64,000 nt of DNA from Octopus sinensis (GCF_006345805.1 NC_043024.1:8122001-8186000); one strand, 5' to 3'. Shown: positions 40,492-63,255, counted from the first letter of the stretch. Numbers and translations are program-made. Notes: generated by a model from the sequence alone, not told the origin.

Positions 40492-40630
40492 ATGACCAAA
40501 CTTTCAAGAAACTTTCTTTTGGCACCGAGCCACTTGGTGACATTTTTGGTCCTGGCATTGACCACCATCGCTGTGTCAGGCCGTCACCTGTCGAGTGGAC
40601 CTCAACCGGAGCAAATACATATCTCCTATG
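40492..40630 (+). CDS. ACP7: Purple acid phosphatase (ACP7/PAPL-like) leader exon 1A: signal peptide plus QPEQIHISYG
   Basis: MTKLSRNFLLAPSHLVTFLVLALTTIAVSGRHLSSGPQPEQIHISY-G|gtaaga. Hydrophobic signal peptide; PEQIHISY matches the PEQVHLSY start of the ACP7 FN3-like domain; phase-1 GT donor is compatible with exon 63061. Confidence 0.85.
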
Positions 40631-40788
40631 GTAAGACCTTAATTAGTTTGCTTTCGTTGTTTGTTTTTACTGTTGTTAATGATGCTATTATCATCATCAT
40701 CATCGTCATATTCATCATCATCTCCATCATTGTCAACATCATTCACATCATCATCATCATCATCTATCAGTATACTACAGCCAGCACC

Positions 40789-41780
40789 AATACCTATTTC
40801 TTTACTACCCACAAGGGGCTAAACATAGAGGGGACAAACAAAGACAGACAAACGGATTAAGTCGATTATATCGACCCCAGTGCATAACTGGTACTTACTT
40901 TATCGACCCCCGAAAGGATGAAAGGCAAAGTCGACCTAGGCGGAATTTGAACAGACAACGTAACGGCAGACGAAATACCTATTTCTTTACTACCCACAAG
41001 GGGCTACACACAGAGGGGACAAACAAGGACAGACAACTGGATTAAGCCAATTATATCGACCCCAGTGCATAACTGGTACTTATTTAATCAACCCCGAAAG
41101 GATGAAAGGCAAAGTCGACCTTGGCGGAATTTGAACTCAGAACATAACGGCAGACGAAATACCTATTTCTTTACTACCCACAAGGGGCTAAACATAGAGG
41201 GGACAAACAAGGACAGACAAATGGATTAAGTTGATTATATCGACCCCAGTGTGTAACTGGTACTTATTTAATCGACCCCGAAAGTATGAAAGGCAAAGTC
41301 GACCTCGGCGGAATTTGAACTCAATGTAAAAAGACAGACGAAATACCTATTTCTTTATTACCCACAAGGGGCTAAAGATAGAGGGGACAAACAAGGACAG
41401 ATAAACTGATTAAGTCGATTATATTGACCCCAGTGCATAACTGGTACTTATTTAATCAACCCCGAAAGGATGAAAGGCAAAGTCGACCTCGGCGGAATTT
41501 GAACTCAGAACGTAAAAATACAGACGAAATACCTATTTCTTTATTACCCACCAGGGGCTAAACACAGAGAGGACAAACAAGGACAGACAAAGGGATTAAA
41601 CCAATTATATCGACCCCAGTGCATAACTGGTACTTATTTAATTGACCCCGAAAGGATGAAAGGCAAAGTCGACCTCAGCGGAAAGGACAGACAAATATAT
41701 TAAGTTGATTATATCGACCCCAGTGCATAACTGGTACTTAATTTATCGACCCCGAAAGGATGAAAGGCAAAGTCGACCTT
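40789..41780 (-). mobile_element. SINE-D headless tandem array, about 5 units of ~185 bp
   Basis: 'aatacctatttc' at 40789, 40974, 41158, 41342, 41528. Confidence 0.85.
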
Positions 41781-41786
41781 GGCATT

Positions 41787-42570
41787 TAGATTAGGTTTGT
41801 TACAGGATAATAGTCATTGGATGGCAGCAATGTCAGATGCTTCTGTGTCTTGCACAGTAGGCAATTCAAGAACTCTGTTTGCCATTCTCCTTAAATACTG
41901 TGATTTAGAGGATCCAGCATCAACATGGCTAAGATACAGAAGTTATCTTGTGGAAGATTACAAGTACCAGATTCAGTTGCAATATCCTGGTACGAAAATA
42001 GAATGCAGTGACGAAATCTATAATGCCACATTAATGGTAATTGAAGACATAGTTGTTTCTCTGAAGGGAAATGAATTGTATGAGTATGGACTTCCTGATA
42101 TCAATTGTTCTGACCTCAATAATTTAGCAATATTTCTATTAAATGAAACTTCCTGTGACACTGAAGACCACTCAAGATCACCATCATCATCATCATCGTT
42201 TAACGTCCGCTTTCCATGCTGGCATGGGTTGGACGATTTTGACTGAGGGCTGGCGAACCAGATGGCTGCCCCAGGCTCCAGTCTCGATCTGGCAGAGTTT
42301 CTACAGCTGGATGCCCTTCCTAACGCCAACCACTCCGAAAGTATAGTGGGTGCTTTTTATGTGCCACCGGCATGGGCACCAACCAGGTAGTACTGGCAAC
42401 GACCTCGCTCGAATCTTTTTACACGTGCCACCGGCACAGGTGCCAGTGAAGCGACGTTGGTAACGATCACGCTCGAATGGTGATGTTAGTGAAAATGAAC
42501 TTAAATTGTTGCCTGAACAAAAAGTATTTAACAATGCTACACTTGAAAAGCAACATTTGATACATCAAAA
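41787..42570 (+). mobile_element. Helitron Rep/helicase relic interrupted by SINE-B (42178-42482)
   Basis: RLGLLQDNSHWMAAMSDASVSC...RTLFAILLKYCDLEDPASTW...IYNATLMVIEDIVVSLKGNELYEYGLP...LLNETSCD, resuming VSENELKLLPEQK. This matches the LGLL.DD.W..EA...R.LFAILL...P..LW...YN..L..IED...GLP...ETSYD linker before the Helitron PIF1 helicase (recognised from memory). Confidence 0.75.
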
Positions 42571-42668
42571 TACTCTACTCTTTACTCTTTTACTTGTTTT
42601 ACTTGCCTAACCAACGGCTTGTCTTGTCTGCCAACCAAGGTTACACAAAGGAAAGAAAACTTAGAATA

Positions 42669-43620
42669 CATCATCATCGTTTAACGTCCGCTTTCCATGT
42701 TAGCATGGGTTGGACGGTTTTGACTGAGGTCTGGCAAACCAGATGGCTGCACCAGGTTCCAATCTTGATCTGGCAGAGTTTCTACAGCTGGATGCCCTTC
42801 CTAACACCAACCACTCCGAAAGTATGGTGGGTGCTTTTACATGCCACCGGCACGGGGGCCAGTCAGGCGATACTGGCAATGGCCACGCTCAAATGGTGCT
42901 TTTTATGTGCCACCTGCACAGGAGCCAGTCCAGCGGCACTGGCAACAACCTCGCTCGAATGTTTTTTCACATGCCACCAGCACAAGTGCTAGTAAGGCAA
43001 CGCAGGTAATGATCGCGCTCAAATGATGTTTTTAATGTGCCATTGGCTCGGAGGCCAGCTTGTTGCTCTGGCCCCATCTCACTCGTATGGTACTCTTAAT
43101 ACCAAGCGGTACTGTCAGGTGGTACATCATTACCTGATATGCCTGATTATATTTTTGCTGACCATGTACTAAATGTCCTTTTACATTTTTTTCTTTCACC
43201 TGTCCGAGATATACTCTTACTCTTTTACTTGTTTCAGTCATTTTGACTGTGGCCATGCTGGAGCACCGCCTTTAGTTGAGCAAATCGACCCCGGGACTTA
43301 TTCTTTATAAGCCCAGTACTTATTCTATCGGTCTCTTTTGCTGAACCGCTAAGTAACAGGGACATAAACACACCAGCATCGGTTGTCAAGCAATGCTAGG
43401 GGGACAAACACAGACACACACAAACGCACACATATATATACATACATACATATATACGACTGGCTTCTTTCAGTTTCCGTTGATCAAATCCACTCACAAG
43501 GCTTTGGTCGGCCCGGGGCTATAGCAGAAGACACTTGCCCAAGGTGCCATGCAGTGGGACTGAACCCGGAACCATGTGGTTGGTAAGCAAGCTACTTACC
43601 ACACAGCCACTCCTGCACCT
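42669..43620 (-). mobile_element. SINE-B (42669-43030) and SINE-A (43213-43620)
   Basis: Family motifs as above. Confidence 0.8.
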
Positions 43621-43787
43621 ATTTGACTGACTATACATTACAACAAACATCATATTTCCCATTGTAGCTTTCTTGTTGCAATTCTCTCTCACTGAGAAAA
43701 CAGATTTATATGATAGCTGAGGTATCTAGGTTGAAAAGCCAACTTTTGCTTGGCAGCTATTAACAGGCATTGGCCAATCCAGTTTCC

Positions 43788-44535
43788 TATACCTATTTCT
43801 TTATTACCCACAAGGAGCTAAACACAGAGAAGACAGACAAGGACAGACAAATGGATTAAGTCGATTACTTTGACTCCAGTGCGTAACTGGTACTTAATTT
43901 ATCGACCCCGAAAGGATGAAAGGCAAAGTCGACCTCGGCGGAATTTGAACTCAGAACATAACAGCAGACGAAATACCTATTTCTTTACTACCCACAAGGG
44001 GCTAAACACAGAGGGGAGAAACAAGGACAGCGAAACGGATTAAGTCGATTATATCGACCCCAGTGCGTAACTGGTACTTAATTTATCGACCCCGAAATGA
44101 TGAAAGGCAAAGTCGACCTCAGCGGAATTTGAACTCAGAATGAAAAGACAGACGAAATACCTATTTCTTTACTACCCACAAGGGGCTAAACAGAGAGGGG
44201 ACAAACAAGAACAGACAAAGGGATTAAGTCGATTACATCGACCCCAGTGCGTAACTGGTACTTAATTTATCGACCCCGAAATGATGAAAGGCAAAGTCGA
44301 CCTCGGCGGAATTTGAACTCAGAACATAACAGCAGACGAAATACCTATTTCTTTACTAAACACAGAAGGGACAAACAAGGACGGACAAATGGATTAAGTC
44401 GATTACATCGACCCCAGTGCGTAAGTGGTACTTAATTTATCGACCCCGAAAGGATGAAAGGCAAAATCGACCTCGGCTGAATTTGAACTACGCATTTCGC
44501 CCGGCGTGCTAACGTCTCTGCCAGCTCGCCGCCTT
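43788..44535 (-). mobile_element. SINE-D tandem array, about 4 units plus head
   Basis: Repeating ~185-bp body; head gcatttcgcccggcgtgctaacg...gccgcctt at ~44493-44535. Confidence 0.85.
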
Positions 44536-44829
44536 TTACACAAACCGTACCAAAGAGAGTGAAATATCGATCCACAGCCATAAAATACATTTACAACAGC
44601 CGTCAAAAAATACTAAAACGCAGAATAAAAAGGGAAACGGAAAGAGTGATTAAGTGAATTGATATCACAAGGGTGATAACTGTTACATAGCGACCTGAAA
44701 AACAAACGGTGGGGGGGGGGGAGAAGAAAAATAACAAAAGAAGTGGAGTGAGACCTCAAATACTAACAACATAAGGAAGTAACTAAACTCGTGATATATT
44801 GACATTTAATTATATTTCTACTTCATACT

Positions 44830-44942
44830 CTGAACAATCAATCTGGTGACAAGATAGTTGGAAGTCTGGAAGCCTAGCCTTTTCCCACACAGACCTATAA
44901 CTACATATATAATTACATATTTATACTTTATATACGGTCGTG
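44830..44942 (+). promoter_or_regulatory. Putative proximal promoter/5'UTR of exon 1B, conserved upstream of exon 1C (47893-47960 plus 48166-48191)
   Basis: 'caatcaatctggtgacaag.tagttggaag.ctggaagcctagccttt.cccacacagacctata' and 'atttatactttatatacggtcgtgATG' are near-identical in both cassettes, whereas sequence further upstream is much more diverged. Confidence 0.45.
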
Positions 44943-45099
44943 ATGGAGATTCCGGGTCCCTATGATAGCAGGAGATTCGCTATTTTGTTATTGTCATTCT
45001 ACAACGTTTTGTTGCTTTGTTCGACTACACCTATCTACGATGGTTACCCTACAACTAAATTCGACCCTTATCAGCCCGAACAGATACACATCGCTTATG
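44943..45099 (+). CDS. ACP7: ACP7-like alternative leader exon 1B (GC donor)
   Basis: MEIPGPYDSRRFAILLLSFYNVLLLCSTTPIYDGYPTTKFDPYQPEQIHIAY-G|gcaagt. 157 nt, phase 1, donor at the same position as 1A, hydrophobic N-terminal stretch. Confidence 0.75.
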
Positions 45100-45489
45100 G
45101 CAAGTTCCTTTTATTAATTCAATTAATGTTTTTTTCTTATTCACAAATGTCATTTATATCGTCTCACGGACACTTTCCTTTTTGGATCTTTTAGGTTTGA
45201 ACGGCAGTTTTTTTCTAGCAGTGTCATATGAAATTGTCACCCCTAATTATAACCTTAGTATCGATCTATTGCATTTCAATCTATTTTAGGGTTAGGGTTA
45301 GGGGGAAGGGTATCTTTTTTTCTTCTTCGCCGCTTTATAAATACATTCTACCAGTATACGAAGTTTAAAAGTGTTTAGTTACGTGGAAATTATTTTTAAA
45401 AAATGCCGTTCAAACCGAAAAGATCCTTATTATTATTGTTATCATCATCATTATCATCATCATCATCATCATCATTATCATCAGTATTA

Positions 45490-45630
45490 TTATTATTCAT
45501 CTTAAGATCTGTTGTATCTTCCAGTGGCTTGCTGCATGCTGTCTATGGTACTCTGTTATTTGTTTTTTCAACTATCTAATACTTACCTGATTATTCTGGT
45601 CGTGCCCAAGCAGGCAAGCCATCTTTTGGG
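45490..45630 (-). mobile_element. R4/Dong-like 3' terminal fragment with (AAT)n tail
   Basis: Minus strand ..ACLGTTRIIR*VLDS* resembles the LLGTARILRKVL C-terminus of R4-clade proteins; followed by a short UTR and aataataat. Confidence 0.45.
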
Positions 45631-45819
45631 TTAATGACCTGGAAATGAAATGCGCGCAAAGCAACGGGAGGGTGCGGAGAATTCGGAAAATTCACAAGGT
45701 CTGAGTTTTTCCCACATAAATTTTAGGAACATGAGATTTCTTTTCAATGAAATTTGATAGAAATACCATTTCTATTATACATTACTATTTACATTACCAT
45801 TATAAAGAAATTTTAAAAA

Positions 45820-46334
45820 AATAATAATAATGAAATTTTTGTATACAGTGCTCAGGTGCACCACAACTTGTCAGAAAGTGCGTATAAAGCATATGCAGTA
45901 ATGTACAAATGTCTGGGAAGTGAACAGTGTATGAGTCAGATACATGCATGCGTGTGTATGGAGGGGAGAAAATCAGGTGTAGTGTTGGCGAATCTCAGGA
46001 AGCATGGAAGTTTTGAAGGATGCAGTGCTCCGACAACTAACAACTGATGCCGGCAGTTTGTTCCATACTTCAGCAACTCTTAGGGTGAAAAAATGTTTCT
46101 GAAAGAAAATTTAATTATTTTAATAATAATAATAATGAAATTACTGTATACAGTGCTCAGGTGAACCACAACTTGTCAGAAAGTGCGTATAAAGCATATG
46201 CAGTAATGTACAAATGTCTGGGAAGTGAACAGTGTATGAGTCTGATACATGCATGCGTGTGTATGGAGGGGAGAAAATCAGTAGTGTTGGCGAATGTCAG
46301 GAAGCATGGAAGTTTTGAAGGATGCAGTGCTCCG
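45820..46334 (-). mobile_element. Two tandem CR1 3'-end fragments
   Basis: Near-identical to 4826-5100 at 45820-46105 and 46123-46334. Confidence 0.8.
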
Positions 46335-46904
46335 TGGGTTAACCATTTGGGTCATTGTTTACAACTTGACCCGAAAAGGAAAATCCCCCCCCCCCAAATA
46401 CTGGAATGGGTGTAAAACAATGTGTAGTAAAGGAATATGGAAAAAAAAACAAAAAGAAATGCGCGCAAAGCAACGGGTGGGTGGGGAGAGGACTTCGGAA
46501 AATTCACAAGATCCAAGCTTTTCCCTCGTAACTTTGAGGAAAATGAAATTTTTTCCAACGAAATTTTTGTATAAATACTTTTCCAAGAGGGTGAGGAGAG
46601 GACTTCGGGAAATTCGCAAAATCCGAGTTTTCAATAATTTTTTATGTTTTGGCTTCAATTTTATTTCATTTTCAATTATTTTTACGCTTTTTTAACCATT
46701 CGTCGTTATTACTTTCTCCCCCCCTCTCTCTCTCTCTATCTATCTATATATATATATATATATGTATATATGTCCATAATCTCAAACGAGATTATTCCTG
46801 CCGTGTTTCTCAAACAGTGAGGATATCAGAGACCGCTACAGTTACCAAGAAATTATGTTACAAACTGCCGTTCAAACCGAAAAGATCCTGGGTTTACAAT
46901 AGCC

Positions 46905-47292
46905 ATGTGGAAGCACTCCGTCGGTTACGACGACGAGGGTTCCGGTTGATCCGATCAACGGAACAGCCTGCTCGTGAAATTAACGTGTAAGTGGCTGAGC
47001 ACTCCACAGACATGTGTACCCTTAACGTAGTTCTCGGGGATATTCAGCGTGACACAGAGAGTGACAAGGCCGGCCCTTTGAAATACAGGTACAACAGAAA
47101 CAAGAAGTAAGAGTGAGAGAATGTTGTGGTGAAAGAGTACTGCAGGGATCACCACCATCTCCTGCCGGAGCCTCGTGGAGCTTTTAGGTGTTTTCACTCA
47201 ATAAACACTCACAACGCCCGGTCTGGGAATCGAAACCGCGATCCTACGACCGCGAGTCCGCGGCCCTAACCACTGGGCCATTGCGCCTCCAC
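46905..47292 (-). mobile_element. SINE-C long variant
   Basis: Head tggaggcgcaatggcccagtggttagggccgcggactcgcgg on the - strand ending at ~47292. Confidence 0.8.
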
Positions 47293-47537
47293 ACAATATG
47301 TTTCTTTATTACCCACAAGGGGCTAAACACAGAGGGGACAAACAAGGACAGACAAAGGGATTAAGTCGATTACATCTGGTACTTTATTTATCGACCCCGA
47401 AAGGATGAAAGGCAAAGTCAACCCTGGCGGAATTTGAACTCAGAACGTAACTACAGAAGAAATACTGCTAGGCATTTTGCCCGGCGTGCTAACGATTCTG
47501 CCAGCTTGCCGCCTTAAAAAAGCAAGCATACACACAC

Positions 47538-47610
47538 TGCCGAAACCCGGGATCGAACCAGGGACCTTTAGATCTTCAGTCTAACGCTCTCCCAACTGAG
47601 CTATTTCGCC
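47538..47610 (-). tRNA. tRNA-Phe(GAA), 73 nt, one acceptor-stem mismatch (G2:G71)
   Basis: GGCGAAATAGCTCAGTTGGGAGAGCGTTAGACTGAAGATCTAAAGGTCCCTGGTTCGATCCCGGGTTTCGGCA. As I recall the canonical metazoan tRNA-Phe, it differs only at position 2 (C->G). Anticodon GAA at 47575-47577; T6 Pol III terminator 16 nt downstream (47516-47521). Confidence 0.92.
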
Positions 47611-48191
47611 TCCACACAATAGCCATAAAAATACACAGACTGCAGTGAAAAAGAGGGAAAGAGAATATGAGTGAGAGACGGAGGGAGGAAGGGGGAGAGA
47701 TTAAATCTAATTAGAATATCAAGGGAGATAACTATCACAAGTGTTAACGTAGCGTCATGAGAAACAGGAAAGAAAGAAGAAAAAATGTCAAAAGCTGTGA
47801 AACGATAAACAATAATAATAACAACAAAGGAAGAATGTAACTAACCATCGTGATATATCGACATTTAAATATATATATATGTACTTTACATTCTGAGCAA
47901 TCAATCTGGTGACAAGGTAGTTGGAAGCCTGGAAGCCTAGCCTTTACCCACACAGACCTATATATCTTATATAATTATATTGTATAGAGGGCATTATTAC
48001 ACATAAATGCCCCACGCTAAGAGGGACATAAGTCATTACTACCGAAATTTAACTAATCATACCTAATGCAGTTCCCGAAGCAAGACATTTAAAAAAAACT
48101 GATAATTTCTTGTTGTTAAGATTCCTTATCAAGATTTTATCCTTAATTGTTATTATATAATTATAATATTTATACTTTATATACGGTCGTG

Positions 48192-48348
48192 ATGGAGATT
48201 CCGGGTCCCTATGATAGCAGGAGATTCGCTATTTTGTTATTGTCATTCTACAATGTTTTGTTGCTTTGTTCGACCACATCTGTTTACAATGGTTACACTA
48301 CAACTAAATTCGACCCTTATCAGCCCGAACAGATACACATCGCTTATG
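48192..48348 (+). CDS. ACP7: ACP7-like alternative leader exon 1C (GC donor)
   Basis: MEIPGPYDSRRFAILLLSFYNVLLLCSTTSVYNGYTTTKFDPYQPEQIHIAY-G|gcaagt. 150/157 nt identical to 1B; intact frame; phase 1. Confidence 0.75.
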
Positions 48349-48454
48349 GCAAGTTCCTTTTATTTAATTCAATTAATGCTTTATTTAAATTCACAAATGT
48401 TATTTTTATTCGTCTCACGGCCGTCTTCCTTTTCGTCTGGCCAACTTTCTTACA

Positions 48455-48569
48455 ATGTTCTTCTTTTTAAAAAGATCATCATCATCATCATCATCATCAT
48501 CATTATTATTATTATTCAACCCTATTAAATTCAACCCTTATCAGCCCGAACAGATACACATCGCTTATG
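48455..48569 (+). CDS. ACP7: Partial fourth leader copy 1D (3' part of exon plus GC donor); in-frame ATG supplied through a (TCA)/(TTA) microsatellite
   Basis: MFFFLKRSSSSSSSSSLLLLFNPIKFNPYQPEQIHIAY-G|gcaagt. Homology to 1B/1C covers only ~48526-48582; it may be a pseudo-exon. Confidence 0.35.
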
Positions 48570-48578
48570 GCAAGTTCC

Positions 48579-48609
<31 letters not shown>

Positions 48610-48923
48610 GAGTGAGAGAGCAGTTCATGCCATCAAAGTGACGCTGGGGTAAAATATACGAAGCCCAATATACCCATCATGACTACCCGTCTGATAAGAG
48701 TACACCAGGCACATGCATCACAACCATATGTGTGCGACATGGTGATCTCATATCAAAATAAACAGCACATGACCTTGTAGGTGGGGCCCAATTAGAATTG
48801 TCTTCAGGTTGAGTAGCCCATCCCGCTCAAAAGGTCCCTGAATAAGGGTTGTTTAAGGATGTTGAAAGAACCACCCATGTTTCCAGAGGTGAATTATTCA
48901 AACCCCAAAGAATCCCTCTCAAC
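48610..48923. mobile_element. Truncated copy of an (ATT)n-embedded non-coding element (longer copy 58564-59121)
   Basis: 'gagtgagagagcag..catgccatcaaagtgac.ctggggtaaaatatacgaagccc' shared with 58564; (ATT)n on both sides. Confidence 0.75.
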
Positions 48924-48974
<51 letters not shown>

Positions 48975-49204
48975 GTTTTTTCCTTCTTTCTTCAAATTTC
49001 CTTCCGTTTCCCGCCGAGTGTTTTCCATACACCTCCAGGGCAGAGAAGGGCATTGTATGCATTCCCAGATTACACGCGCAAATTCACAGATAAAATATGT
49101 ATTTAAAGATTAATAGATAAATAAATTCATGGATGGATGTTATTTTCACAGCGATAGTGCTCTTCTCAGTACATGAGCCGTTCCAGTTAATACGATGGCA
49201 TTCT

Positions 49205-50904: not shown

Positions 50905-52205
50905 ACAAAGGCGGTGCGCTGGCAGAATTGTTAGCACACCGGGCGAAATGCTTAGCGATATTTTGTCTGCCGTTATGTTCTGAGTTCAAATTCCGCCGAG
51001 GTCGACTTTGCCTTTCGTCCTTTCGGGGTCGATAAATTAAGTACCAGTTACGCACTGGGGTTGATATAATCGACTTAATCCGTTTGTCTCCTCTGTGTTT
51101 AGCCCCTTGTGGGTAGTAAAGAAATAGGTATTTCGTCTGCCGTTATGTTCTGAGTTCAAATTCTGCTGAGGTCAACTTTGCCTTTCATCCTTTCGGGGTT
51201 GATAAATTAAGTACCAGTTACGCACTGGGGTCGATGTAATCGACTTAATCCATTTGTCTGTCCTTGTTTGTCCCCTCTGTGTTTAGCCCCTTTTGGGCAA
51301 TAAAGAAATAAGATTCTGAAAGAAATAAGGCGGCAAACTGGCAGAAATGTTAGCACGCCGGGCAAAATGTTTAGTGGTATTTCGTCTGCCGTTACGTTCT
51401 CAGTTCAAATTCCACTGAGGTCGACCTTACCTTTTATCATTTCGGGGGTCGATAAATTAAGTACCAGTTATGCACTGGGGATCGATGTAAAACTGTAGTG
51501 GCATGTTGGCAGAACATTAGCTGCTGTCCACAAAGAATGACTGTGTAAAAGCAGCATGTGACTGAATCAGCTGGTCTCTGCATAAATAAGATCGGCAAGG
51601 GTGGAGACACCGTTTTGTCTGTTTGTCTATGACATTCTGCTTAATTAGCACTAAAATAAGCCTTTATATAACCCTTGAACCACAGCATTCCAGAAGGATC
51701 TAGCAGATTCTCTCATGTGAAGTCTGGTTGCAGATTGGTCATCTCAAACTCTATTGGATGGCACCATTGACAAGTGTCTTCTGTTATATATTTCTTTACT
51801 ACCCACAAGGGGCTAAACATAGAGGGGACAAACAAGGACAGACAAAGGGATTAAGTCAATTACATCGACTCCAGTGCGTAACTGGTACTTAATTTATCGA
51901 CCCTGAGAGGATGAAAGGCAAAGTCGACCTCGGCGGAATTTGAACTCAGAACGTAACGACAGACGAAATACCTATTTCTTTATTACCCACAAGGGGCTAA
52001 ACATAGAGGAGACAAACAAGGACAGACAAAGGGATTAAGTTGATTACATCGACCCAGTGTGAAACTGGTACTTTATGTCTCGACCCCGAGAGGATGAAAG
52101 GCAAAGTCGACCTCGGCGGAATTTGAACTCAGAACGTAGCGACAGACGAAAAATACCGCTAAGCATTTCGCCCGGCGCGCTAACGTTTCTGCCAGCTCGC
52201 CACCT
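50905..52205. mobile_element. SINE-D arrays (50905-51480 +, 51790-52205 -)
   Basis: Family motifs as above. Confidence 0.8.
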
Positions 52206-53230: not shown

Positions 53231-53275
<45 letters not shown>

Positions 53276-53477
53276 CTATATATATATATATATGCACACA
53301 CACATATACAACAGGTTTATTTCAGTTTCCTTGCAGACACATACACATACACACATACACACACATGCTCACACACACACACACAAATACATAGTTGTTT
53401 TTCAAGTTCTGTATGGAAACCAACATCGAACATTCAACTGCTAATTAGCATGAATGTTCACTGCTGTAAACAACAAG

Positions 53478-53482
<5 letters not shown>

Positions 53483-53509
<27 letters not shown>

Positions 53510-54373: not shown

Positions 54374-57300
54374 GGTCCCATGTGAAAAGCACGGGTGATG
54401 GTCCCACATAAAAAGTAGTAGTGATGCGGCTATGTAAAAAGCACTGGTTGTCGGTCCCACATAAAAAGCACTGGTGACAGTGCCACATCATAAAAGCACT
54501 GGCGATAGTGCCACATGAAAAGCACAGAGGACGGTACCACATAAAAAGCACTGGTGACGGTGCCACATGAAAAGCACGGGTGATGGTGTCACATAAAAAG
54601 CACAGGGTAACTGTGCCACATAAAAAGCACGGGTGACGGTGCCACATAAGAAGCACAGGGTAACTGTGCCACATAAAAAGCACAGGGGACGGTGTCACAT
54701 AAGAAGCACAGGGTAACTGTGCCACATAAAAAGCACGGGTGATGGTCGCATATAAAAAGCATTGGTGGCTGGTACCTTGTAAAAAGCATGGGTGATGGTG
54801 CCACATAAAAGGCACGAGTGATGGTGCCACATAAAAAACATGGGTGATGGTGCCACATAAAAAGCACTGGTGACGGTGCCACATAAAAAGCACCGGTGAC
54901 GGTGTCACATAAAAAGCACTGGTGATGGTGCCACATAAAAAGCACCGGTGACGGTGCCACATAAAAAGCATGGGTGACGGTGTCACATAAAAAGCACTGG
55001 TGATGGTGCCACATAAAAAGCACCGGTGACGGTGCCACATAAAAAGCACTGGTGACGGTGCCACATAAAAAGCACGGGTGATGGTGCCACATAAAAAGCA
55101 CGGGTGATGGTGCCACATAAAAAGCATGGGTGATGGTGCTATATAAAAAGCACAGGTGATGGTGCCACATAAAAAGCACAGGGTAACTGTGCCACATAAA
55201 AAGCACGGGTGATGGTGCCACATAAAAAGCACGGGTGACGGTGTCACATAAAAAGCACGGTTGACGGTACCACATAAAAAGCACGGGTGATGGTGCCACA
55301 TAAAAAGCACAGGTGATGGTGCCACATAAAAAGCACTGGTGACGGTGCCACATAAAAAGCATGGGTGATGGTGCCACATAAAAAGCACGGGTGACGGTGC
55401 CACATAAAAAGCACAGGTGACGGTGCCACATAAAAAGCACGGGTGATGGTGCCACATAAAAAACACAGGGCAGGGGACGGTGTCACATAAAAAGCATGGG
55501 TGATGGTGCAACATAAAGCACAGGTGATGGTGCCACATAAAAAGCACGGGTGACGGTGTCACATAAAAAGCACGTTGATGGTACCCGACATAAAAAGCAC
55601 GGGTGATGGTGGCCACATAAAAAGCACAGGTGATGGTGCCACATAAAAAGCACTGGTGACGGTGACACATAAAAAGCACAGGTGACGGTGCCACATAAAA
55701 AGCACAGGTGATGGTGCCACATAAAAAGCATGGGTGATGGTGCCACATAAAAAGCACGGGTGATGGTGCCACATAAAAAGCATGGGTGATGGTGCCACAT
55801 AAAAAGCACGGGTGATGGTGCCACATAAAAAGCATGGGTGATGGTGCCACATAAAAAGCACAGGTGATGGTGCCACATAAAAAGCACGGGTGACGGTGTC
55901 ACATAAAAAGCACGGTTGACGGTACCACATAAAAAGCACGGGTGATGGTGCCACATAAAAAGCACTGGTGACGGTACCACATAAAAAGCACAGGTGATGG
56001 TGCCACATAAAAAGCACAGGTGATGGTGCCACATAAAAAGCACTGGTGACGGTGCCACATAAAAAGCACAGGTGACGGTGCCACATAAAAAGCACGGGTG
56101 ATGGTGCCACATAAAAAACACAGGGGACGGTGTCACATAAAAAGCATGGGTGATGGTGCCACATAAAAAGCACAGGTGATGGTGCCACATAAAAAGCACG
56201 GGTGACGGTGTCACATAAAAAGCACGGTTGACGGTACCACATAAAAAGCACGGGTGATGGTGCCACATAAAAACACAGGGGACGGTGTCACATAAAAAGC
56301 ATGGGTGATGGTGCCACATAAAAAGCACGGGTGATGGTGCCACATAAAAAGCATGGGTGATGGTGCCACATAAAAAGCACAGGTGATGGTGCCACATAAA
56401 AAGCACGGGTGACGGTGTCACATAAAAAGCACGGTTGACGGTACCACATAAAAAGCACGGGTGATGGTGCCACATAAAAAGCATGGGTGATGGTGCCACA
56501 TAAAAAGCACAGGTGATGGTGCCACATAAAAAGCACAGGTGACGGTGTCACATAAAAAGCACGGTTGACGGTACCACATAAAAGCACGGGTGATGGTGGC
56601 CACATAAAAAGCATGGGTGATGGTGCCACATAAAAGCACAGGTGATGGTGCCACATAAAAAGCACGGGTGACGGTGTCACATAAAAAGCACACGGTTGAC
56701 GGTACCACATAAAAAGCACGGGTGATGGTGCCACATAAAACCACAGGGGACGGTGTCACATAAAAAGCACGGGTGATGGTGCCACATAAAAAGCATGGGT
56801 GATGGTGCCACATAAAAAGCACAGGTGATGGTGCCACATAAAAAGCACGGGTGACGGTGTCACATAAAAAGCACGGTTGACGGTACCACATAAAAAGCAC
56901 GGGTGATGGTGCCACATAAAAAACACAGGGGACGGTGTCACATAAAAAGCACGGGTGATGGTGCCACATAAAAAGCATGGGTGATGGTGCCACATAAAAA
57001 GCACAGGTGATGGTGCCACATAAAAAGCACGGGTGACGGTGTCACATAAAACACGGTTGAACGGTACCACATAAAAAGCACGGGTGATGGTGCCACATAA
57101 AAACACAGGGGACGGTGGTCACATAAAAAGCACGGGTGATGGTGCCACATAAAAAGCATGGGTGATGGTGCCACATAAAAAGCACAGGTGACGGTGCCAC
57201 ATAAAAAGCACGGGTGACGGTGTCACATAAAAAGCACGGTTGACGGTACCACATAAAAAGCACGGGTGATGGTGCCACATAAAAACACAGGGGACGGTGT

Positions 57301-57858
57301 CACATAAAAAGCACGGGTGATGGTGCCACATAAAAAGCATGGGTGATGGTGCCACATAAAAAGCACAGGTGATGGTGCCACATAAAAAGCACGGGTGACG
57401 GTGCCACATAAAAAGCACGGTTGACGGTACCACATAAAAAGCACGGGTGATGGTGCCACATAAAAAGCACGGGTGATGGTGCCACATAAAAAGCATGGGT
57501 GATGGTGCCACATAAAAAGCACAGGTGATGGTGCCACATAAAAAGCACGGGTGACGGTGTCACATAAAAAGCACGGTTGACGGTGCCACATAAAAAGCAT
57601 GGGTGATGGTGCCACATAAAAAGCACGGGTGATGGTGCCACATAAAAAACACAGGGGACGGTGTCACATAAAAAGCACTGGTGACGGTGCCACATAAAAA
57701 GCACAGGTGACGGTGCCACATAAAAGGCACGGGTGATGGTGCCACATAAAAAGCATGGGTGATGGTGCCACATAAAAAGCATGGGTGATGGTGCCACATA
57801 AAAAGCATGCGTGACGGTGCCACATAAAAAGTACTGGTGACGGTGCCATGTAAAAACA
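54374..57858 (+). repeat. 26-bp satellite (ataaaaagcacgggtgatggtgccac), about 130 units, with a higher-order repeat
   Basis: Period 26 (for example 55091 to 55117). Variant units recur at a ~181-bp period; the array runs directly into a SINE-B 3' half (57860-58030). Confidence 0.95.
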
Positions 57859-58119
57859 CCCAGTACACTCTATGAAGTGGTTGGCATTAGGAAGGGCATT
57901 CAGCCATAGAAACCATGTCAGAACAAATATCAAAGCCTGGTGGCGCCTCCGGCCTTGCCAGTTCCTGTTAAGTCATCCAACCCATGCCAGCATGGAAAAA
58001 TAGATGTTAAATGTTGATGATGATGATGACATATATTATTATATTTGGTGATGGTCATCTTTTGCCAATTAAATACGCGTTCTATATATTTGGTCTTCAT
58101 TTTAACATTATTATTATTG

Positions 58120-58327
58120 CATCCCACATCACCAGTTCTGCTTACCAAAAGTGGCCCACTTGGCACCGTGCATTTGTCGTCGCATAATGGGTGCCGCCTC
58201 CGATCGGGAGAGGAGCGGCCCGTTTCGCCCGTTCCGAGTTCGAGAGTAGATCGAGGCCGTCAACGTCCCCGGGGCCTCCAGTTGTTTGTTTTACCCGACG
58301 GAATTGCGTGTCGTTCTCCTGCTGCCG

Positions 58328-58370
<43 letters not shown>

Positions 58371-58503
58371 CGGCTTGATTGGTCTTTCACCCCTACACCC
58401 AGTTCCGACGATTGATTTGGACGTCAGAGGCGCTTCGGACTTCCACCAGAGTTTCCTCTGGCTTCGTCCCGACCGGGCATGGATCGCCATCTTTTGGGTC
58501 CCC
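58120..58503 (-). rRNA. Dispersed 28S rRNA fragment (pseudogene), ~385 nt
   Basis: Minus strand GGGACCC(A)AAAGATGG...GAAGCCAGAGGAAACTCTGGTGGAAGTCCG...CTAGTAGCTGGTTCCCTCCGAAGTTTCCCTCAGGATAGCTGG...AGTGGGCCACTTTTGGTAAGCAGAACTGG: collinear conserved LSU blocks. No other rDNA nearby; (ATT)n on both sides. Confidence 0.9.
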
Positions 58504-58563
58504 GGATTATTATTATTAATATTAATATTATTATTATTATTATCAATATTATTATTATTATTA

Positions 58564-59118
58564 AGTGAGAGAGCAGTGCATGCCATCAAAGTGACACTGG
58601 GGTAAAATATACGAAGCCCAGTATACCCATCATGACTACCCGTCTGATAAGGGTACACCAGGCACATGCATCACAACCATATGTGCGCGACATGGTGATC
58701 TCATATGAAGATAAACAGCGCATGACCTTACAGGTGGGGCCCAGTTAGAATTTTCTTCAGGTTGAGTAGCCCATCCCGCTCAAATGGTCCCTGAATAAGG
58801 GTTGTTTAAGGATGTTGAAAGAACCACCCATGTTCCCGAGGTGAACTATTCAAACCCCAAAGAATCCCTCTCAACACATGGCTATGATGCTCCTCCACTA
58901 CTTCTGCTCGTGATCAGAGATGCACATATCGTCAGCCACTAAGGGACATGCTCAACTGGTTAAGGTCAAACAACTGACAAGCAGCAAATCTGTGGTATTG
59001 AGCAGAATATTTACTGTAGCCCATCGTTTATACCAAGACAAAACAATGTACATGATAACACTTCCAATCAGTTAAGATCAGAAGCCATGAGAGCCACTGC
59101 CTGGTACTGCATCAGGGC

Positions 59119-59121
<3 letters not shown>
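58564..59121. mobile_element. ~560-bp non-coding element embedded in (ATT)n
   Basis: Second, longer copy of 48610-48923; no ORF or TIR recognised. Confidence 0.7.
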
Positions 59122-59167
<46 letters not shown>

Positions 59168-59227
59168 GTGTTTTTTCCTTCTTTTTTCAAATTTTAATAT
59201 TTCAAATATTATTGTTATTATTATTAT

Positions 59228-59710
59228 TCAGTAGTTTTATTTTTATAGCGTGCTTTCACTTCACTACCGAGCGCAGCTCTGTGTGCCTTGGGTATGTGCT
59301 GTGATTGTTGTGATGCTCTGATGGTATTGTATGGAAAGTGTTCTGCGTAGGATGTGTGCAGTGCCTAGTAGTGCAATTTTCTGTATGTTATATGTGTTTG
59401 TAAGTCCTGGTGTTTTTGTTATGCATTTGTCTGAATATTTTTTATCATGCCTAATGACCTACTATGATAGGAATTGTTTCTGTTTTCAGGTTCCACATTC
59501 TAGTTATCTCTATTTCCGGTCTTTGTATTTTGAGAGTTTCTCCATTTCTTTTAGAGACACGTTGTCATCTGCCGGTATTGATACATCAATTAGAAAGCAT
59601 TTTTTTTCTTCATGATCTCTGACAACTATATCTGGTCTGTTGGCCTTAATTTCTCTATCTGTGTGTATCGGCATATCCCAGAGTATGGTTGCTTTCTCGT
59701 TTTTTGTTAT
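59228..59710 (-). mobile_element. R4/Dong-clade non-LTR 3' end (restriction-like endonuclease domain), copy 1
   Basis: EKATILWDMPIHTDREIKANRPDIVVRDHEEKKCFLIDVSIPADDNVSLKEMEKLSKYKD..EIEITRMWNLKTETIPIIVG.LG...NIQKIALLGTAHILRRTLS: RPD...D..K/KY PD-(D/E)xK RLE motifs; frameshifted; (AAT)n tail. Confidence 0.85.
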
Positions 59711-59732
59711 TGTTATTAATTATTATTATTAT

Positions 59733-60240
59733 TCTATGTTTGACTTTTGCTTTATATTTGTACAAGTTGGCTCCAAGTCTCACCCAGAGACCTCAAGAGA
59801 CAACAGAGTTGGAAGTTCATGTTGTTGTTATGCCTAGTGTGCCATATATTGGGGGGGGGGGATGTTGTACTAATGAATGTCTAAAAAAAAAAGTTTTTTT
59901 TTTTTTTTTTTTAAACCGAAAATTATGTTTGTTTTAAACCTTGAGGTTACATAGAGAGTATTTTGCGTAGGATATGAGCAGTTCCCATGAGCACTATCTT
60001 TTGAACTTCTGCCATTTTTGGGTTCCTGGTATCTGAGTTAGGTAGCTATCAGCCCCTTTTGCTCATTCCCAGGGCACCTATGACAACAGGTATTGTTTTA
60101 GTCTTCAGCTTCCACATTTTGCTGATTTCTATTTCAAGATTTTATATTTGCTCAGTTTTTGGTAGGTCTTGACAGATACGTTTATATCGATTGGGACAGT
60201 CATATCAATGAGGAGGCATGTTCTTTGTTTGAAGTCTTCA
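59733..60240 (-). mobile_element. R4/Dong-clade non-LTR 3' end, copy 2 (different subfamily)
   Basis: DFKQRTCLLIDMTVPIDINVSVKTYQKLSKYK..EIEISKMWKLKTKTIPVVIGALG...EVQKIVLMGTAHILRKILSM*, then a 3'UTR and (AAT)n tail at ~59733. Confidence 0.85.
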
Positions 60241-60400
60241 TTATTATTATTATTATCAATATTATTATTATTATTATTATTATTATCAATATTATTATTA
60301 TTATTATTATTATTATCAATATTATTATTATTATTATTATTATTATAATTAGTTTATTGTCAGAGTTCGTTTGTCGTACACTCTTTGTGTGAAATCGTTT

Positions 60401-60626
60401 GTTGAAACAGATATTGTTATATTTGGGAATGACCGGGATTTTTTTTTTGTGCCAGAAAGTCGTTGAAGAGGTCACTAAATGTGACAAATGAACTAATAAT
60501 AAAGTTAAAAGTAGAAGATCAACTAAACAGTGTTTATTGGTACCAAAAAAGCAAAAGCAAAAAAAAAAGAAAAAAGAAAAAAAAAAGAAAATGCCTATCC
60601 CCAAATATAACAATATCTGTTTCAAC
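60401..60626. other. 27-bp perfect inverted repeat pair (probable MITE)
   Basis: gttgaaacagatattgttatatttggg (60401-60427) and cccaaatataacaatatctgtttcaac (60600-60626); imperfect outward extension. Confidence 0.7.
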
Positions 60627-60659
60627 ACAATTTCATATCAAGAAGCTCGCAAAACAAAT

Positions 60660-60741
60660 ACATAAACACACATATATAATATATATACACACACACATAT
60701 ATATACATACATACAATATATATATATATATATATATATGA

Positions 60742-60806
<65 letters not shown>

Positions 60807-60861
60807 GTATATATTATATATATATATATTATATATATATATATATATTGTATATGTATAT

Positions 60862-60905
<44 letters not shown>

Positions 60906-61062
60906 GTATATGTATATATATTATATATATATATATGTATGTATATGTATATATATATATATATACACACACATATATATACATACATACAAAAATATAT
61001 ATATATATAATATATATATACACACACATATATACATACATACAAATATATATATATATAGT

Positions 61063-61155
<93 letters not shown>

Positions 61156-61184
61156 ATAATAATATATATATATATATGTATATG

Positions 61185-61216
<32 letters not shown>

Positions 61217-61321
61217 CTATAATATATATATATAGTATATGTATATATATTATATATGAGATATATATGTATGTATATGTATATATATATATATATACAC
61301 ACACATATATATATACATACA

Positions 61322-61361
<40 letters not shown>

Positions 61362-61512
61362 TATATACATACATACAATATATATATATATATTATATAT
61401 ATATATATATTATATATACACACACACACATATACACATACATGTATATATATAATATATTTATATATATACACATATATATATACAAACACACATATAT
61501 ACATATATGTGT
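60660..61512. repeat. (TA)n-dominated microsatellite domain
   Basis: Directly visible; source of the IY/YI ORFs. Confidence 0.95.
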
Positions 61513-61674
61513 GTCGGAGCAATCTCAATTAATCAGCCGAAATTGCGAAGATGATTGGTTCTTGACTGATGACTGAGGGCTTCGAATGTCCCGTCCTGTG
61601 GTTCTTGTGTCGTCTCCTTGGTGTTTCACATTCTTGTCCCAGTTTGCATATATTTTTTACTTTTTACATATACA

Positions 61675-61824
61675 CCATCATCATCATCATCATCATCATC
61701 ATTTAGCGTCCGTTCTCCATGCTAGCATGGGTTGGACGGTTCAACTGGGGTCTGTGAAGCTGGAAGGCTTCATCAGGCCCAGTCAGATCTGGCAGTGTTT
61801 CTACGGCTGGATGCCCTTCCTAAC

Positions 61825-61864
<40 letters not shown>

Positions 61865-62765
61865 TCACACACATATATACATATATATCATCATCATCAT
61901 CATCGTTTAATGTCCGATTTCCATGCTAGCATGGGTTGGATGGTTCGACCGGGGTCTGGGAAGCCATGGAGTCTGCACCAGGCTCCAGTCTGATCTGGCA
62001 GTGTTTCTACAGCTGGATGCCCTTCCTAACGCCAACCACTCCGTGAGTGTACTGGGTGCTTTTTCATATGCCACCGGCACAGGGGCCAGGGGAGGCTGGC
62101 AACGGCTACGATCGGTTGGTGCTTTTTGTATAGGTTGTACATTCAAAGCAATGAATAGTTGTATTCAAAGCAATGATTAGTAAATTCACGAAACCAGTAT
62201 GCTTGAATCTCTTTAATAATTTCACAATAATGACTTTTATTACTTTTATTCCTACCTCAGTTCATCTAATTGTATATATCTTTCATTACTTTTCATAAAA
62301 AGCCTCTACTTTCTTTGATTTCCAATGTGCATTTTCGTTTATTTTTCTTACTTTCCCCTTACATTACCACATGCAGTTTCTATTTTCTTTTTGTAACATA
62401 TTTCTATTATATATATATATATATACATATATACATACACACACATATATATATACACACATATATATATATACATATATATCATCATCATCATCATCAT
62501 TATCATTTAACGTTCGCTTTCCATGCTATCATGGGTTGGACGATTTGACTGGGGTCTGGCGAACCAGACTCCAATCTGATCTGGCAGAGTTTCTCCAGCT
62601 GGATGCCCTTCCTAACGCCAACCAGTCCGAGAGTGTAGTGGGTGCTTTTACATGCCACCGGCACGAGAGCCAGTTTGGTGGTACTGGCAACGGCCACGCC
62701 CAAATGGTGCTTTTTATGTGCCACCTGCACAGGAGCCAGTCCAGCGGCACTGGCTACGTCCTCGC
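61675..62765 (-). mobile_element. Three SINE-B fragments (61675-61825, 61888-62128, 62480-62765)
   Basis: (CAT)n tail plus ccatgctagcatgggttgga...ctggatgcccttcctaac. Confidence 0.8.
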
Positions 62766-62770
62766 TATAA

Positions 62771-62812
<42 letters not shown>

Positions 62813-63060
62813 CATATATAAATAATCATATGTATGCAAAGTATGCATGCATCCCTATATGATTGCACATCAAGAGTTTATATGAACCTAGACTTTGTGA
62901 ACATGTAGCAGTTATACTCCCCATGCACTTAGCCATGTTGATTCCATCAATCTAAAATCTGAAAATAATTGTTTTTATTGTTTGTCTTTTCCTTGTAAAA
63001 TGCACATTTTTTCTTTGCTTACGTGAAAATAAAAAAAAAGGTATTTTAATTAATCAACAG

Positions 63061-63255
63061 GTGAGGATTATTCCATGATAATTACCTGGAGTACCTTCAT
63101 GCGTGGTCTCAACACCATTGTACAATATGGCACCAGTTCTCTTGATCACGTCGCGTATGGCAAAGCCCAACGCTTCATCAATCCAGACCTGTATTTCCAC
63201 ACTCAATATATCCATGTCGCCACGGTCCCCAATCTTCAACCAGGCGTGAAATACA
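63061..63255 (+). CDS. ACP7: ACP7/PAPL-like purple acid phosphatase exon 2 (N-terminal FN3-like domain)
   Basis: aacag|GT GAG GAT ...(G)EDYSMIITWSTFMRGLNTIVQYGTSSLDHVAYGKAQRFINPDLYFHTQYIHVATVPNLQPGVKY-A|gtaagt. 195 nt, phase 1 at both ends; matches ACP7 SMTVTWTT..VQFG..YIHRVTL..L.PGVQY. Catalytic exons lie beyond the window. Confidence 0.9.

What the first reader, a model, noticed from the sequence alone, without database searches (positions are those of the whole stretch)
40492..63255. Variable-first-exon cassette array for a purple acid phosphatase (ACP7-like)
Leader exons 1A, 1B, 1C and partial 1D each carry an ATG, end in QPEQIHI[S/A]Y-G at the same phase-1 position, and join in frame to the single exon 2 at 63061 (G+GT=Gly, giving ..YGEDYSMIITW). 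No second copy of exon 2 is visible between 40.6 and 63 kb, so these are not complete tandem genes. 1A-1C have their own ATG and hydrophobic leader, and 1B/1C have their own duplicated upstream block. The layout resembles promoter-choice clusters (UGT1A, clustered protocadherins: variable first exons to shared constant exons). It could yield secreted or lysosomal versus membrane-anchored or tissue-specific isoforms of one enzyme. As I recall, vertebrate ACP7 has a single leader; I know of no description of this arrangement.
Basis: partly seen in the sequence, partly recalled or inferred. Interest (0 to 1): 0.85.

Follow-up and report, generated by a model that had tools for sequence, protein, structure and literature searches.

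The report
Duplicated signal-peptide exons of a phosphatase gene
Four copies of the signal-peptide (leader) exon of a purple acid phosphatase gene sit upstream of a single second exon; this is a real but fairly ordinary tandem exon duplication, and whether the extra copies are used cannot be decided without RNA data.

Summary
The sequence observation holds. On the + strand, four segments encode ...QPEQIHI[S/A]Y-G and end in phase 1: 1A at 40492-40630, 1B at 44943-45099, 1C at 48192-48348 and 1D at 48526-48569. There is one exon 2 (63061-63255) and no other purple-acid-phosphatase exon in the 64 kb. 1A+exon 2 and 1B+exon 2 both read as the N-terminal PAP domain from profile position 1.

Only 1A has a GT donor; 1B, 1C and 1D all have G|GCAAGT, a GC-AG type donor. 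1D is a 61-nt fragment between microsatellites, not a leader. 1B and 1C are copies of a ~0.7-kb unit. All three leaders look like cleavable signal peptides, so the mature enzymes would differ by about 10-20 N-terminal residues. This is not a UGT1A or protocadherin style domain choice.

1A-type and 1B-type diverged long ago under protein-level constraint: 6 of 7 differences are at third codon positions. 1B and 1C keep ATG, frame and donor. Their identity pattern also fits gene conversion.

Best reading (confidence 0.48): alternative leader exons made by tandem exon duplication, with 1D dead. Main rival (0.32): 1B-1D are unused relics. No RNA or orthologue data were reachable.

The parts
40492..40630 (+). 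Leader exon 1A (coding part). MTKLSRNFLLAPSHLVTFLVLALTTIAVSGRHLSSGPQPEQIHISY-G; canonical donor G|GTAAGA at 40631.
   Evidence: PF16656 from profile position 1 when joined to exon 2; signal-peptide anatomy, candidate cleavage VSG|RH.
44943..45099 (+). Leader exon 1B (coding part). MEIPGPYDSRRFAILLLSFYNVLLLCSTTPIYDGYPTTKFDPYQPEQIHIAY-G; GC donor G|GCAAGT at 45100.
48192..48348 (+). Leader exon 1C, a duplicate of 1B. The CDS is 95.5% identical, with 3 synonymous and 4 non-synonymous codon differences, all in codons 21-36. Same GC donor.
48526..48586 (+). 1D: a 61-nt fragment (last 44 nt of a 1B-type exon plus 17 nt of intron, GC donor at 48570). It has one mismatch to 1B and 1C and sits between (ATC)n(ATT)n and (TTA)n microsatellites. 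Most likely dead.
63061..63255 (+). Shared exon 2, phase 1 in and phase 1 out. It encodes the PAP N-terminal domain (profile positions 8-74) and is the only copy in the window.
44490..45182 (+). Duplication unit B: SINE tail, about 450 nt upstream of the ATG, exon 1B and 83 nt of intron. It is ended on the 3' side by a MITE.
47466..48433 (+). Duplication unit C, homologous to unit B. It has extra insertions: a tRNA-Phe-like element (47538-47610, minus strand) and a ~187-nt insert (about 47980-48165) 27 nt upstream of the ATG, flanked by the repeated TATATAATTAT.
44877..44892 (+). Candidate strong 3' splice site CCTTTTCCCACACAG| lying 50 nt upstream of the 1B ATG, conserved in 1C (AG at 47954-47955). 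If used, 1B and 1C would be internal exons. Joining 1A to 1B gives G AC CTA TAA, an immediate stop.
   Evidence: Read directly from the sequence. This is inference only.
45184..45426 (.). MITE with 29-nt terminal inverted repeats, inserted 84 nt downstream of the 1B donor. It marks the end of 1B/1C homology.
   Evidence: I4, 93% complementary arms; copies elsewhere in the window.

Best explanation
This is the 5' end of an ACP7-like purple acid phosphatase gene. Its signal-peptide exon has been duplicated in tandem, while exon 2 and the rest of the gene stayed single.

There are two old leader types: 1A, and the 1B type. Each has its own ATG and a charged n-region, hydrophobic h-region and small-residue c-region. 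Each ends at the same ancestral phase-1 intron position inside the first beta-strand motif (QPEQIH) of the PAP N-domain.

The 1B type was later re-duplicated locally as a ~0.7-kb unit, giving 1C. A 61-nt piece gave 1D, which is dead.

Proposed mechanism (inferred, not shown): transcription starts upstream of either 1A or a 1B-type exon, and the leader's donor is spliced to the one acceptor at 63060. This gives mRNAs for the same enzyme with different promoters, 5'UTRs and signal peptides, and mature N-termini differing by about 10-20 residues. The GC donors of the 1B type would be weak, regulatable sites. The effect would be regulatory (where, when and how efficiently the enzyme enters the secretory or lysosomal route), not a diversification of catalytic or binding domains.
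For: Shown:
- One exon 2 and four same-phase leader ends.
- Both splice products read as PF16656 from profile position 1.
- The intron position and phase (TATG|GT...AG|GT) are identical in an unrelated invertebrate locus, L002, so this is an ancestral intron.
- 1A and 1B share only their last 28 nt. There are 7 differences, 6 of them at third codon positions (hypergeometric p=0.0014). The two types therefore diverged long ago while both were being translated.
- 1B and 1C both keep the ATG, the open frame, the phase and the donor. The chance of this is about 0.135 under neutral substitutions at the flank divergence.
- Non-synonymous divergence between 1B and 1C is 0.033 against 0.144 in the flanks (Poisson P=4e-4). 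Synonymous divergence is 0.09, compatible with the flanks.
- The duplication unit carries at least 450 nt of upstream sequence, so a promoter would have been copied along.
- G|GCAAGT is perfect at +3 to +6. This is the compensated consensus described for functional GC donors, which are enriched in alternatively spliced genes (PMC2490688).
- 1A, 1B and 1C have signal-peptide anatomy like the single leaders of the comparator loci.
- Recurrent duplication of initial exons flanked by transposons, with several copies used, is documented for Drosophila hydra (PMC9013439).
Against: - There is no transcript, CAGE or orthologue evidence of any kind. Promoter activity and splicing are inferred.
- GC donors make up under 1% of functional donors. 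A T>C change at +2 is also a plausible first step of decay.
- The 1B/1C differences are all packed into 44 nt (codons 21-36). They lie between two tracts of 100% identity (-27 to +62, and codon 37 to intron +30) that contain no synonymous or non-coding change. This mosaic is better explained by gene conversion than by protein-level selection, which weakens the constraint argument. Within the exon, 3 synonymous against 4 non-synonymous is not significant.
- 1D shows that the family produces dead copies.
- 1C has a 187-nt insertion 27 nt upstream of its ATG.
- The two comparator loci have a single leader within 10 kb.
- The old 1A/1B divergence could have accumulated in two separate paralogous genes.
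Confidence: 0.48

Rival explanations
1. Only 1A is the working first exon. 1B, 1C and 1D are unused relics (pseudo-exons) in intron 1. They would be left from a neighbouring paralogue's 5' end, or from an old alternative exon that has lost function, and were copied around by local duplication and gene conversion in a repeat-rich intron.
For: - All three 1B-type copies carry GC instead of GT, while 1A and both comparator loci have GT.
- 1D is clearly a fragment.
- About 66% of 38-64 kb is repeated within the window, and a MITE, SINE arrays, a tRNA-like element and microsatellites abut the copies.
- The 100%-identity tracts without synonymous change suggest conversion rather than selection.
- An intact 52-codon ORF in two young copies is not rare by chance (0.135).
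Against: - ATG, frame, phase and an otherwise perfect donor are kept in both full copies.
- The non-synonymous rate is well below flank divergence (P=4e-4).
- The location (same strand, upstream of exon 2, with its own upstream block) is what a usable alternative exon needs.
- For a paralogue fragment to land here by chance is unlikely unless the paralogue was adjacent.
Confidence: 0.32
2. 1B (or 1C) is the native first exon of the gene that owns exon 2. 1A would be the orphaned first exon of an upstream tandem paralogue whose body was deleted. 1A may or may not still splice into exon 2.
For: - 1A and the 1B type are old paralogues, saturated at third positions.
- No PAP exon lies upstream of 1A in 40 kb, as expected after such a deletion.
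- 'YQPEQIHIAYG' of 1B is as close to homologues such as P0003 and P0004 as 1A is.
Against: 1A has the canonical donor and an intact signal peptide. Nothing in the window tells which leader co-evolved with exon 2.
Confidence: 0.1
3. 1A, 1B and 1C are not first exons. They would be mutually exclusive internal exons spliced from an unseen non-coding exon 0 under one promoter.
For: - A strong candidate acceptor, CCTTTTCCCACACAG|, lies 50 nt upstream of the 1B ATG and is conserved in 1C. A weaker one, GTGTTTTCGACAG|, lies about 46 nt upstream of the 1A ATG.
- Joint inclusion of 1A and 1B gives an immediate stop, the usual way mutual exclusivity is enforced.
- Tandem exon duplication is the classic source of mutually exclusive exons.
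Against: This rests on consensus reading only. No exon 0 was identified. The 187-nt insertion in 1C would lie inside such an exon and adds upstream ATGs.
Confidence: 0.08
4. The extra leaders are an assembly or haplotype artefact.
For: The region is highly repetitive.
Against: 1B and 1C differ by about 8% over 280 nt. Their flanks differ by large insertions and different transposons. Collapsed or duplicated haplotypes would be near-identical over long stretches.
Confidence: 0.02

Closest known systems
Recurrently duplicated alternative initial exons flanked by transposons (Drosophila hydra; reviewed in PMC9013439)
   Same: Homologous first exons are repeated in tandem upstream of shared downstream exons. 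Copies are bounded by transposable elements: here a MITE 84 nt after 1B, and SINE, microsatellite and other repeats around 1C and 1D. Young copies and fragments sit alongside older ones.
   Different: In hydra, use of several initial exons was shown experimentally; here none is shown. This case has only 2-3 full copies, and the exons encode a signal peptide for a conserved enzyme.
UGT1A and clustered protocadherin variable-first-exon arrays
   Same: Tandem homologous first exons, each with its own ATG, are compatible in phase with one set of constant exons.
   Different: In those arrays each variable exon encodes a whole functional domain (substrate-binding half, or ectodomain plus transmembrane segment) and has a proven promoter. 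Here the variable part is a cleavable signal peptide, a short linker and 10 residues of the domain. There are only two sequence types, GC donors in one type, and no expression evidence.
Mutually exclusive exons arising from tandem exon duplication
   Same: The exons are homologous and share the same end phase. Joint inclusion would be out of register or stopped. The duplication is old and the protein sequence is conserved.
   Different: Classic mutually exclusive exons are internal, of equal length and homologous throughout. Here homology between 1A and 1B is limited to the last 28 nt, and the exons carry the start codon.
Animal ACP7-type purple acid phosphatase genes with a single leader exon (comparator loci L001, L002)
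   Same: Signal-peptide exon ending at ...(Q)PEQIH(L/I)(S/A)YG. In L002 the phase-1 intron is at the same place; in L001 it lies one codon later in the leader, at the same place relative to exon 2. Intron 1 is 5-7 kb there. Exon 2 encodes the rest of the N-domain.
   Different: The comparators show one leader within 10 kb and GT donors. This locus has four leader copies spread over 8 kb and a 14.5-22.4 kb distance to exon 2.

Membership tests
Purple acid phosphatase (ACP7-like) | N-terminal fibronectin-like PAP domain (Pfam PF16656) | tested here: met
   1A+ex2 E=3.9e-11 and 1B+ex2 E=6.5e-11. Both are above the gathering score, covering profile positions 1-74 of 93. There is a weak match to plant PAP structures over the same region.
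Purple acid phosphatase (ACP7-like) | Metallophosphoesterase domain with the seven metal ligands (GDXG, GDXXY, GNH[D/E], VXXH, GHXH) and the C-terminal domain PF14008 | not testable with these tools
   These exons lie beyond the end of the window. No such exon is found at 63.3-64 kb or elsewhere in the window.
Variable-first-exon / promoter-choice cluster (UGT1A, clustered Pcdh) | Several tandem homologous first exons, phase-compatible with one set of constant exons | tested here: met
   1A, 1B and 1C (and fragment 1D) all end in phase 1. There is a single exon 2.
Variable-first-exon / promoter-choice cluster (UGT1A, clustered Pcdh) | Each variable exon encodes a distinct functional domain, so that choice diversifies the mature protein | tested here: not met
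   The variable part is a signal peptide plus about 7-19 residues. The last 10 residues are the same motif in all copies.
Variable-first-exon / promoter-choice cluster (UGT1A, clustered Pcdh) | Each variable exon has its own active promoter and is spliced in cis to the constant exons | not testable with these tools
   No transcript data were reachable. Only a co-duplicated upstream block of at least 450 nt is seen for 1B and 1C.
Tandem exon duplication giving alternative or mutually exclusive exons | Adjacent homologous exons on the same strand, same phase, with protein-level conservation between copies | tested here: met
   6 of 7 differences between 1A and 1B are at third codon positions (p=0.0014). 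1B and 1C are 95.5% identical in the CDS.
Tandem exon duplication giving alternative or mutually exclusive exons | Functional splice sites on every copy | tested here: inconclusive
   1A has G|GTAAGA. 1B, 1C and 1D have G|GCAAGT, a GC donor with an otherwise perfect consensus. GC donors can be functional, but use here is unproven.

The most novel reading that the evidence does not exclude
A genuinely regulated leader-exon choice in a cephalopod-like PAP gene. Separate promoters would drive 1A or the 1B/1C exons in different tissues. The weak GC donors and conserved flanking tracts would act as regulatory elements. The different signal peptides and N-terminal extensions would route or process the same phosphatase differently. 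That would make a small, evolving 'signal-peptide choice' array, kept homogeneous by gene conversion.
Probability: 0.15. Interest if true: 0.45.

Novelty: new member of a known kind. Interest (0 to 1): 0.25.

Why it matters
If the extra leaders are used, this is a clean, datable example of how tandem duplication of a promoter-plus-signal-peptide exon creates alternative 5' ends for a secreted or lysosomal enzyme. It would also be an example of a GC-AG donor associated with alternative exon choice in a mollusc-type genome. It would matter mainly for annotation: gene models would need 2-3 alternative 5' exons. It does not change what is known about purple acid phosphatases or about promoter-choice clusters. 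If the copies are relics, it is simply a warning that in-frame exon copies in repeat-rich introns can mimic isoform arrays.

Tried and rejected
1. External evidence for this organism all came back empty:
- The search for homologous proteins with 1A+ex2 gave no candidate.
- A profile search with 44 sequences gave 16 hits (nematodes, a fish, unnamed) and no close relative.
- phmmer against 1.84 billion representatives gave a best hit of only 47% identity.
- The metagenome scan by protein and the scan by exact exon-2 DNA both found nothing.
- Exact-ORF look-ups of the 1A and exon-2 ORFs were not on record.
- Literature searches for ACP7 with octopus or with alternative first exons found nothing relevant.

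2. Hidden second exon 2 or other PAP exons in the window: rejected by tblastn and the profile HMM.

3. Exon capture by a Helitron-like element. The ORF at 41779-42246 recalled, from memory only, Helitron helicase N-terminal regions. It has no Pfam hit, and no terminal structures bracket the 1B unit. Dropped.

4. Membrane-anchored versus secreted isoforms. Both leader types have the same 15-residue hydrophobic core score and (-3,-1) cleavage candidates. Not supported.

5. A TATA-like TTTATATAC 10-17 nt upstream of the 1B/1C ATG as the promoter. It would place the transcription start downstream of the ATG, and the next ATG (44962) is out of frame with exon 2. Not a useful argument either way.

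6. Haplotype artefact: rejected.
Full report
**Observation.**
A six-frame search finds the peptide QPEQIHI[S/A]YG four times, all on the + strand. Reading the DNA gives the following.
- 1A: ATG at 40492, exon end 40630.
- 1B: ATG at 44943, exon end 45099.
- 1C: ATG at 48192, exon end 48348.
- 1D: exon-like end at 48569.

Each ends ...TAT G| in phase 1. Exon 2 is 63061-63255, preceded by AG at 63059-60 and followed by GT at 63256. Joining any leader to it gives G+GT = Gly and ...YGEDYSMIITW.

**What the gene is.**
- 1A+exon 2 and 1B+exon 2 both match Pfam PF16656 (purple acid phosphatase N-terminal domain), profile positions 1-74. E-values are 3.9e-11 and 6.5e-11, above the gathering score.
- Plant PAP structures align weakly over the same residues.
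- The leaders therefore end 10 residues into the domain, and exon 2 continues it.
- The catalytic metallophosphoesterase exons lie beyond the window and could not be examined.

**One exon 2 only.**
- tblastn with 80 homologues finds PAP similarity only at the four leader ends and at 63.06 kb.
- A profile HMM built from 78 of these homologues, run with filters off against every inter-stop piece of all six frames, gives exon 2 at E=6e-23 and the four leader ends at E=0.005-0.04. Nothing else scores below E=2.
- So the copies are not complete tandem genes, and there is no PAP exon in the 40 kb upstream of 1A.

1. *Donors.* 1A has G|GTAAGA. 1B, 1C and 1D all have G|GCAAGT. GC donors are under 1% of donors. 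They typically show an otherwise stronger consensus and are enriched in alternatively spliced genes (PMC2490688). Here +3 to +6 are perfect (AAGT). The GC is shared by all three copies, so it predates their duplication.
2. *1D.* It is only 61 nt of homology (48526-48586: 44 nt of exon plus 17 nt of intron), with one mismatch to 1B and 1C. It is wedged between (ATC)n(ATT)n and (TTA)n microsatellites. Its in-frame ATG (48455) heads a poly-Ser stretch with no hydrophobic core. I regard it as dead.
3. *The 1B/1C unit.* 1B and 1C are copies of a unit of about 0.7 kb, 44490-45182 against 47466-48433.
   - A MITE with 29-nt inverted ends (45184-45426) closes the homology after 1B.
   - 1C has a tRNA-Phe-like insertion (47538-47610, minus strand).
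   - 1C also has a ~187-nt insertion 27 nt upstream of its ATG, flanked by the repeated TATATAATTAT.

**Evolutionary tests inside the window.**
- *1A against 1B.* Only the last 28 nt are alignable. There are 7 differences, 6 of them at third codon positions (hypergeometric p=0.0014). The two leader types are old, saturated at silent sites, and both were under protein-level constraint for most of that time. This could have been as two exons of one gene or as first exons of two paralogues.
- *1B against 1C, identity by segment.*

| Segment | Identity |
|---|---|
| Distal upstream | about 60% |
| Proximal upstream | 85% |
| 27 nt before the ATG | 100% |
| CDS | 95.5% |
| Intron | 87% |

- *1B against 1C, rates.* The CDS has 3 synonymous and 4 non-synonymous codon changes. 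Non-synonymous divergence is 0.033, far below the flank divergence of 0.144 (Poisson P=4e-4). Synonymous divergence of 0.09 is compatible with the flanks. Keeping ATG, frame and donor in both copies has probability about 0.135 under neutral substitution.
- *Caveat.* All seven differences lie within 44 nt (codons 21-36). They sit between two perfectly identical tracts that include silent sites, 5' flank and 30 nt of intron. That mosaic is more simply explained by gene conversion. 1D lies inside the 3' identical tract. The within-exon ratio of synonymous to non-synonymous change is not significant. The case for present-day constraint on 1B and 1C is therefore moderate, not strong.

**Protein consequences.**
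- 1A, 1B and 1C each have a charged n-region and a 15-residue hydrophobic core. The mean Kyte-Doolittle score is 2.39 in both types.
- Each has small residues at candidate -3/-1 cleavage sites (VSG|RH in 1A; LCS|TT or CST|T in 1B and 1C).
- This is the same anatomy as the single leaders of the two comparator loci.
- Both types therefore look like cleavable signal peptides. The mature proteins would differ only by an N-terminal extension of roughly 7 against 17-19 residues before QPEQ.

**Comparators.**
Two exon-2-like ORFs from unknown invertebrate assemblies could be fetched with 10-kb flanks.
- L001 (P0023) has one leader 5.6 kb upstream, MGWRIFLFIFGFLSF...TPKQIHLAYG, with donor A|GTAAGT. 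The split codon is one residue later in the leader and at the same place relative to exon 2.
- L002 (P0059) has one leader 6.7 kb upstream...YQPEQIHLSYG, with TATG|GTACGT and ...TTAG|GT. That is exactly the same intron position and phase as here.

The intron is therefore ancestral. A single GT leader is the ordinary state in these two loci, but they are distant relatives (about 45% identity), not orthologues.

**No data from the source organism.**
Protein searches, profile searches, metagenome scans and exact-ORF look-ups found nothing closer than 47% identity. Literature searches found nothing on this arrangement. Promoter use and splicing therefore remain inferred.

**Interpretation.**
The copies lie on the same strand, in order, upstream of the only acceptor. 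That argues for a local origin: either an old tandem duplication of exon 1, or loss of the body of an upstream tandem paralogue.

Under either route the 1B type was a working coding exon for a long time. It still has everything needed except a canonical +2 base.

I therefore favour, at about 0.48, the view that 1A and at least one 1B-type exon are alternative leader exons of one PAP gene. 1C would be a younger copy and 1D a dead fragment.

The main rival (about 0.32) is that 1B-1D are relics, homogenised by gene conversion. Smaller possibilities are:
- 1B is the native exon and 1A an orphan (0.10).
- The leaders are mutually exclusive internal exons fed from an unseen exon 0 (0.08). A strong candidate acceptor, CCTTTTCCCACACAG|, lies 50 nt upstream of the 1B ATG and is conserved in 1C. 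Joining 1A to 1B gives an immediate stop.
- An assembly artefact (0.02) is rejected by the divergence and different insertions of the copies.

**Comparison with known systems.**
The closest described case is recurrent duplication of initial exons bounded by transposons, as in Drosophila hydra. More generally it resembles tandem exon duplication producing alternative or mutually exclusive exons (PMC9013439). It shares only the bare layout with UGT1A and protocadherin clusters, and fails their defining feature that the variable exon encodes a distinct functional domain.

**Verdict.**
Even if fully true it is a new member of a known kind, with regulatory rather than protein-diversifying consequences. 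Interest is about 0.25.

Noticed in passing
window 57974-58500 (minus strand): Two adjacent matches to eukaryotic large-subunit rRNA (Rfam RF02543, model positions 813-1388, 143 and 91 bits). This is a fragment of 28S rDNA sitting inside the long intron, presumably a dispersed rDNA pseudogene piece.
   Followed up: no
window 54385-57856: A 3.5-kb minisatellite of about 133 copies of a 26-nt unit (AAAAGCACGGGTGATGGTGCCACATA, 86% matches) in the intron. It produces long spurious ORFs on the minus strand and strong GC and AT skew.
   Followed up: partly
window 47538-47610 (minus strand): A full-length tRNA-Phe(GAA)-like sequence (ARAGORN; Rfam tRNA 60.9 bits) inserted in the upstream block of 1C and absent from the 1B copy. 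It could be a tRNA gene, pseudogene or SINE head.
   Followed up: partly
window 40789-41683, 43789-44489, 51789-52151 (also 33.9-35.6 kb and 1-283): Head-to-tail arrays of a 184-nt SINE-like unit (about 90% identical) occur repeatedly. Two of the arrays flank the 1A-1B interval.
   Followed up: no
window 63058-63066: The acceptor of exon 2 reads CAG|GTGAGG. This is also a near-perfect 5' splice-site consensus, and the polypyrimidine tract before it is poor (A-rich).
   Followed up: no
window 63474-64000 and 46912-47298: A 259-nt unit is tandemly duplicated just downstream of exon 2 (97% identity). It is related in inverted orientation to a repeat at 46.9-47.3 kb between 1B and 1C (about 95%).
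   Followed up: no
window 13700-15600 and 35600-36200: Kilobase-scale trinucleotide and low-complexity tracts with extreme GC skew give long artificial ORFs (poly-His, poly-Asp, poly-Ser, poly-Ile). No real gene was detected in the 40 kb upstream of 1A.
   Followed up: no
L003 10001-12446: In a third comparator locus (P0065) the PAP N-domain and part of the metallophosphatase domain are encoded without the leader intron. Its N-terminus looks like a type II membrane anchor, so membrane-anchored ACP7-like proteins may exist in other animals.
   Followed up: no
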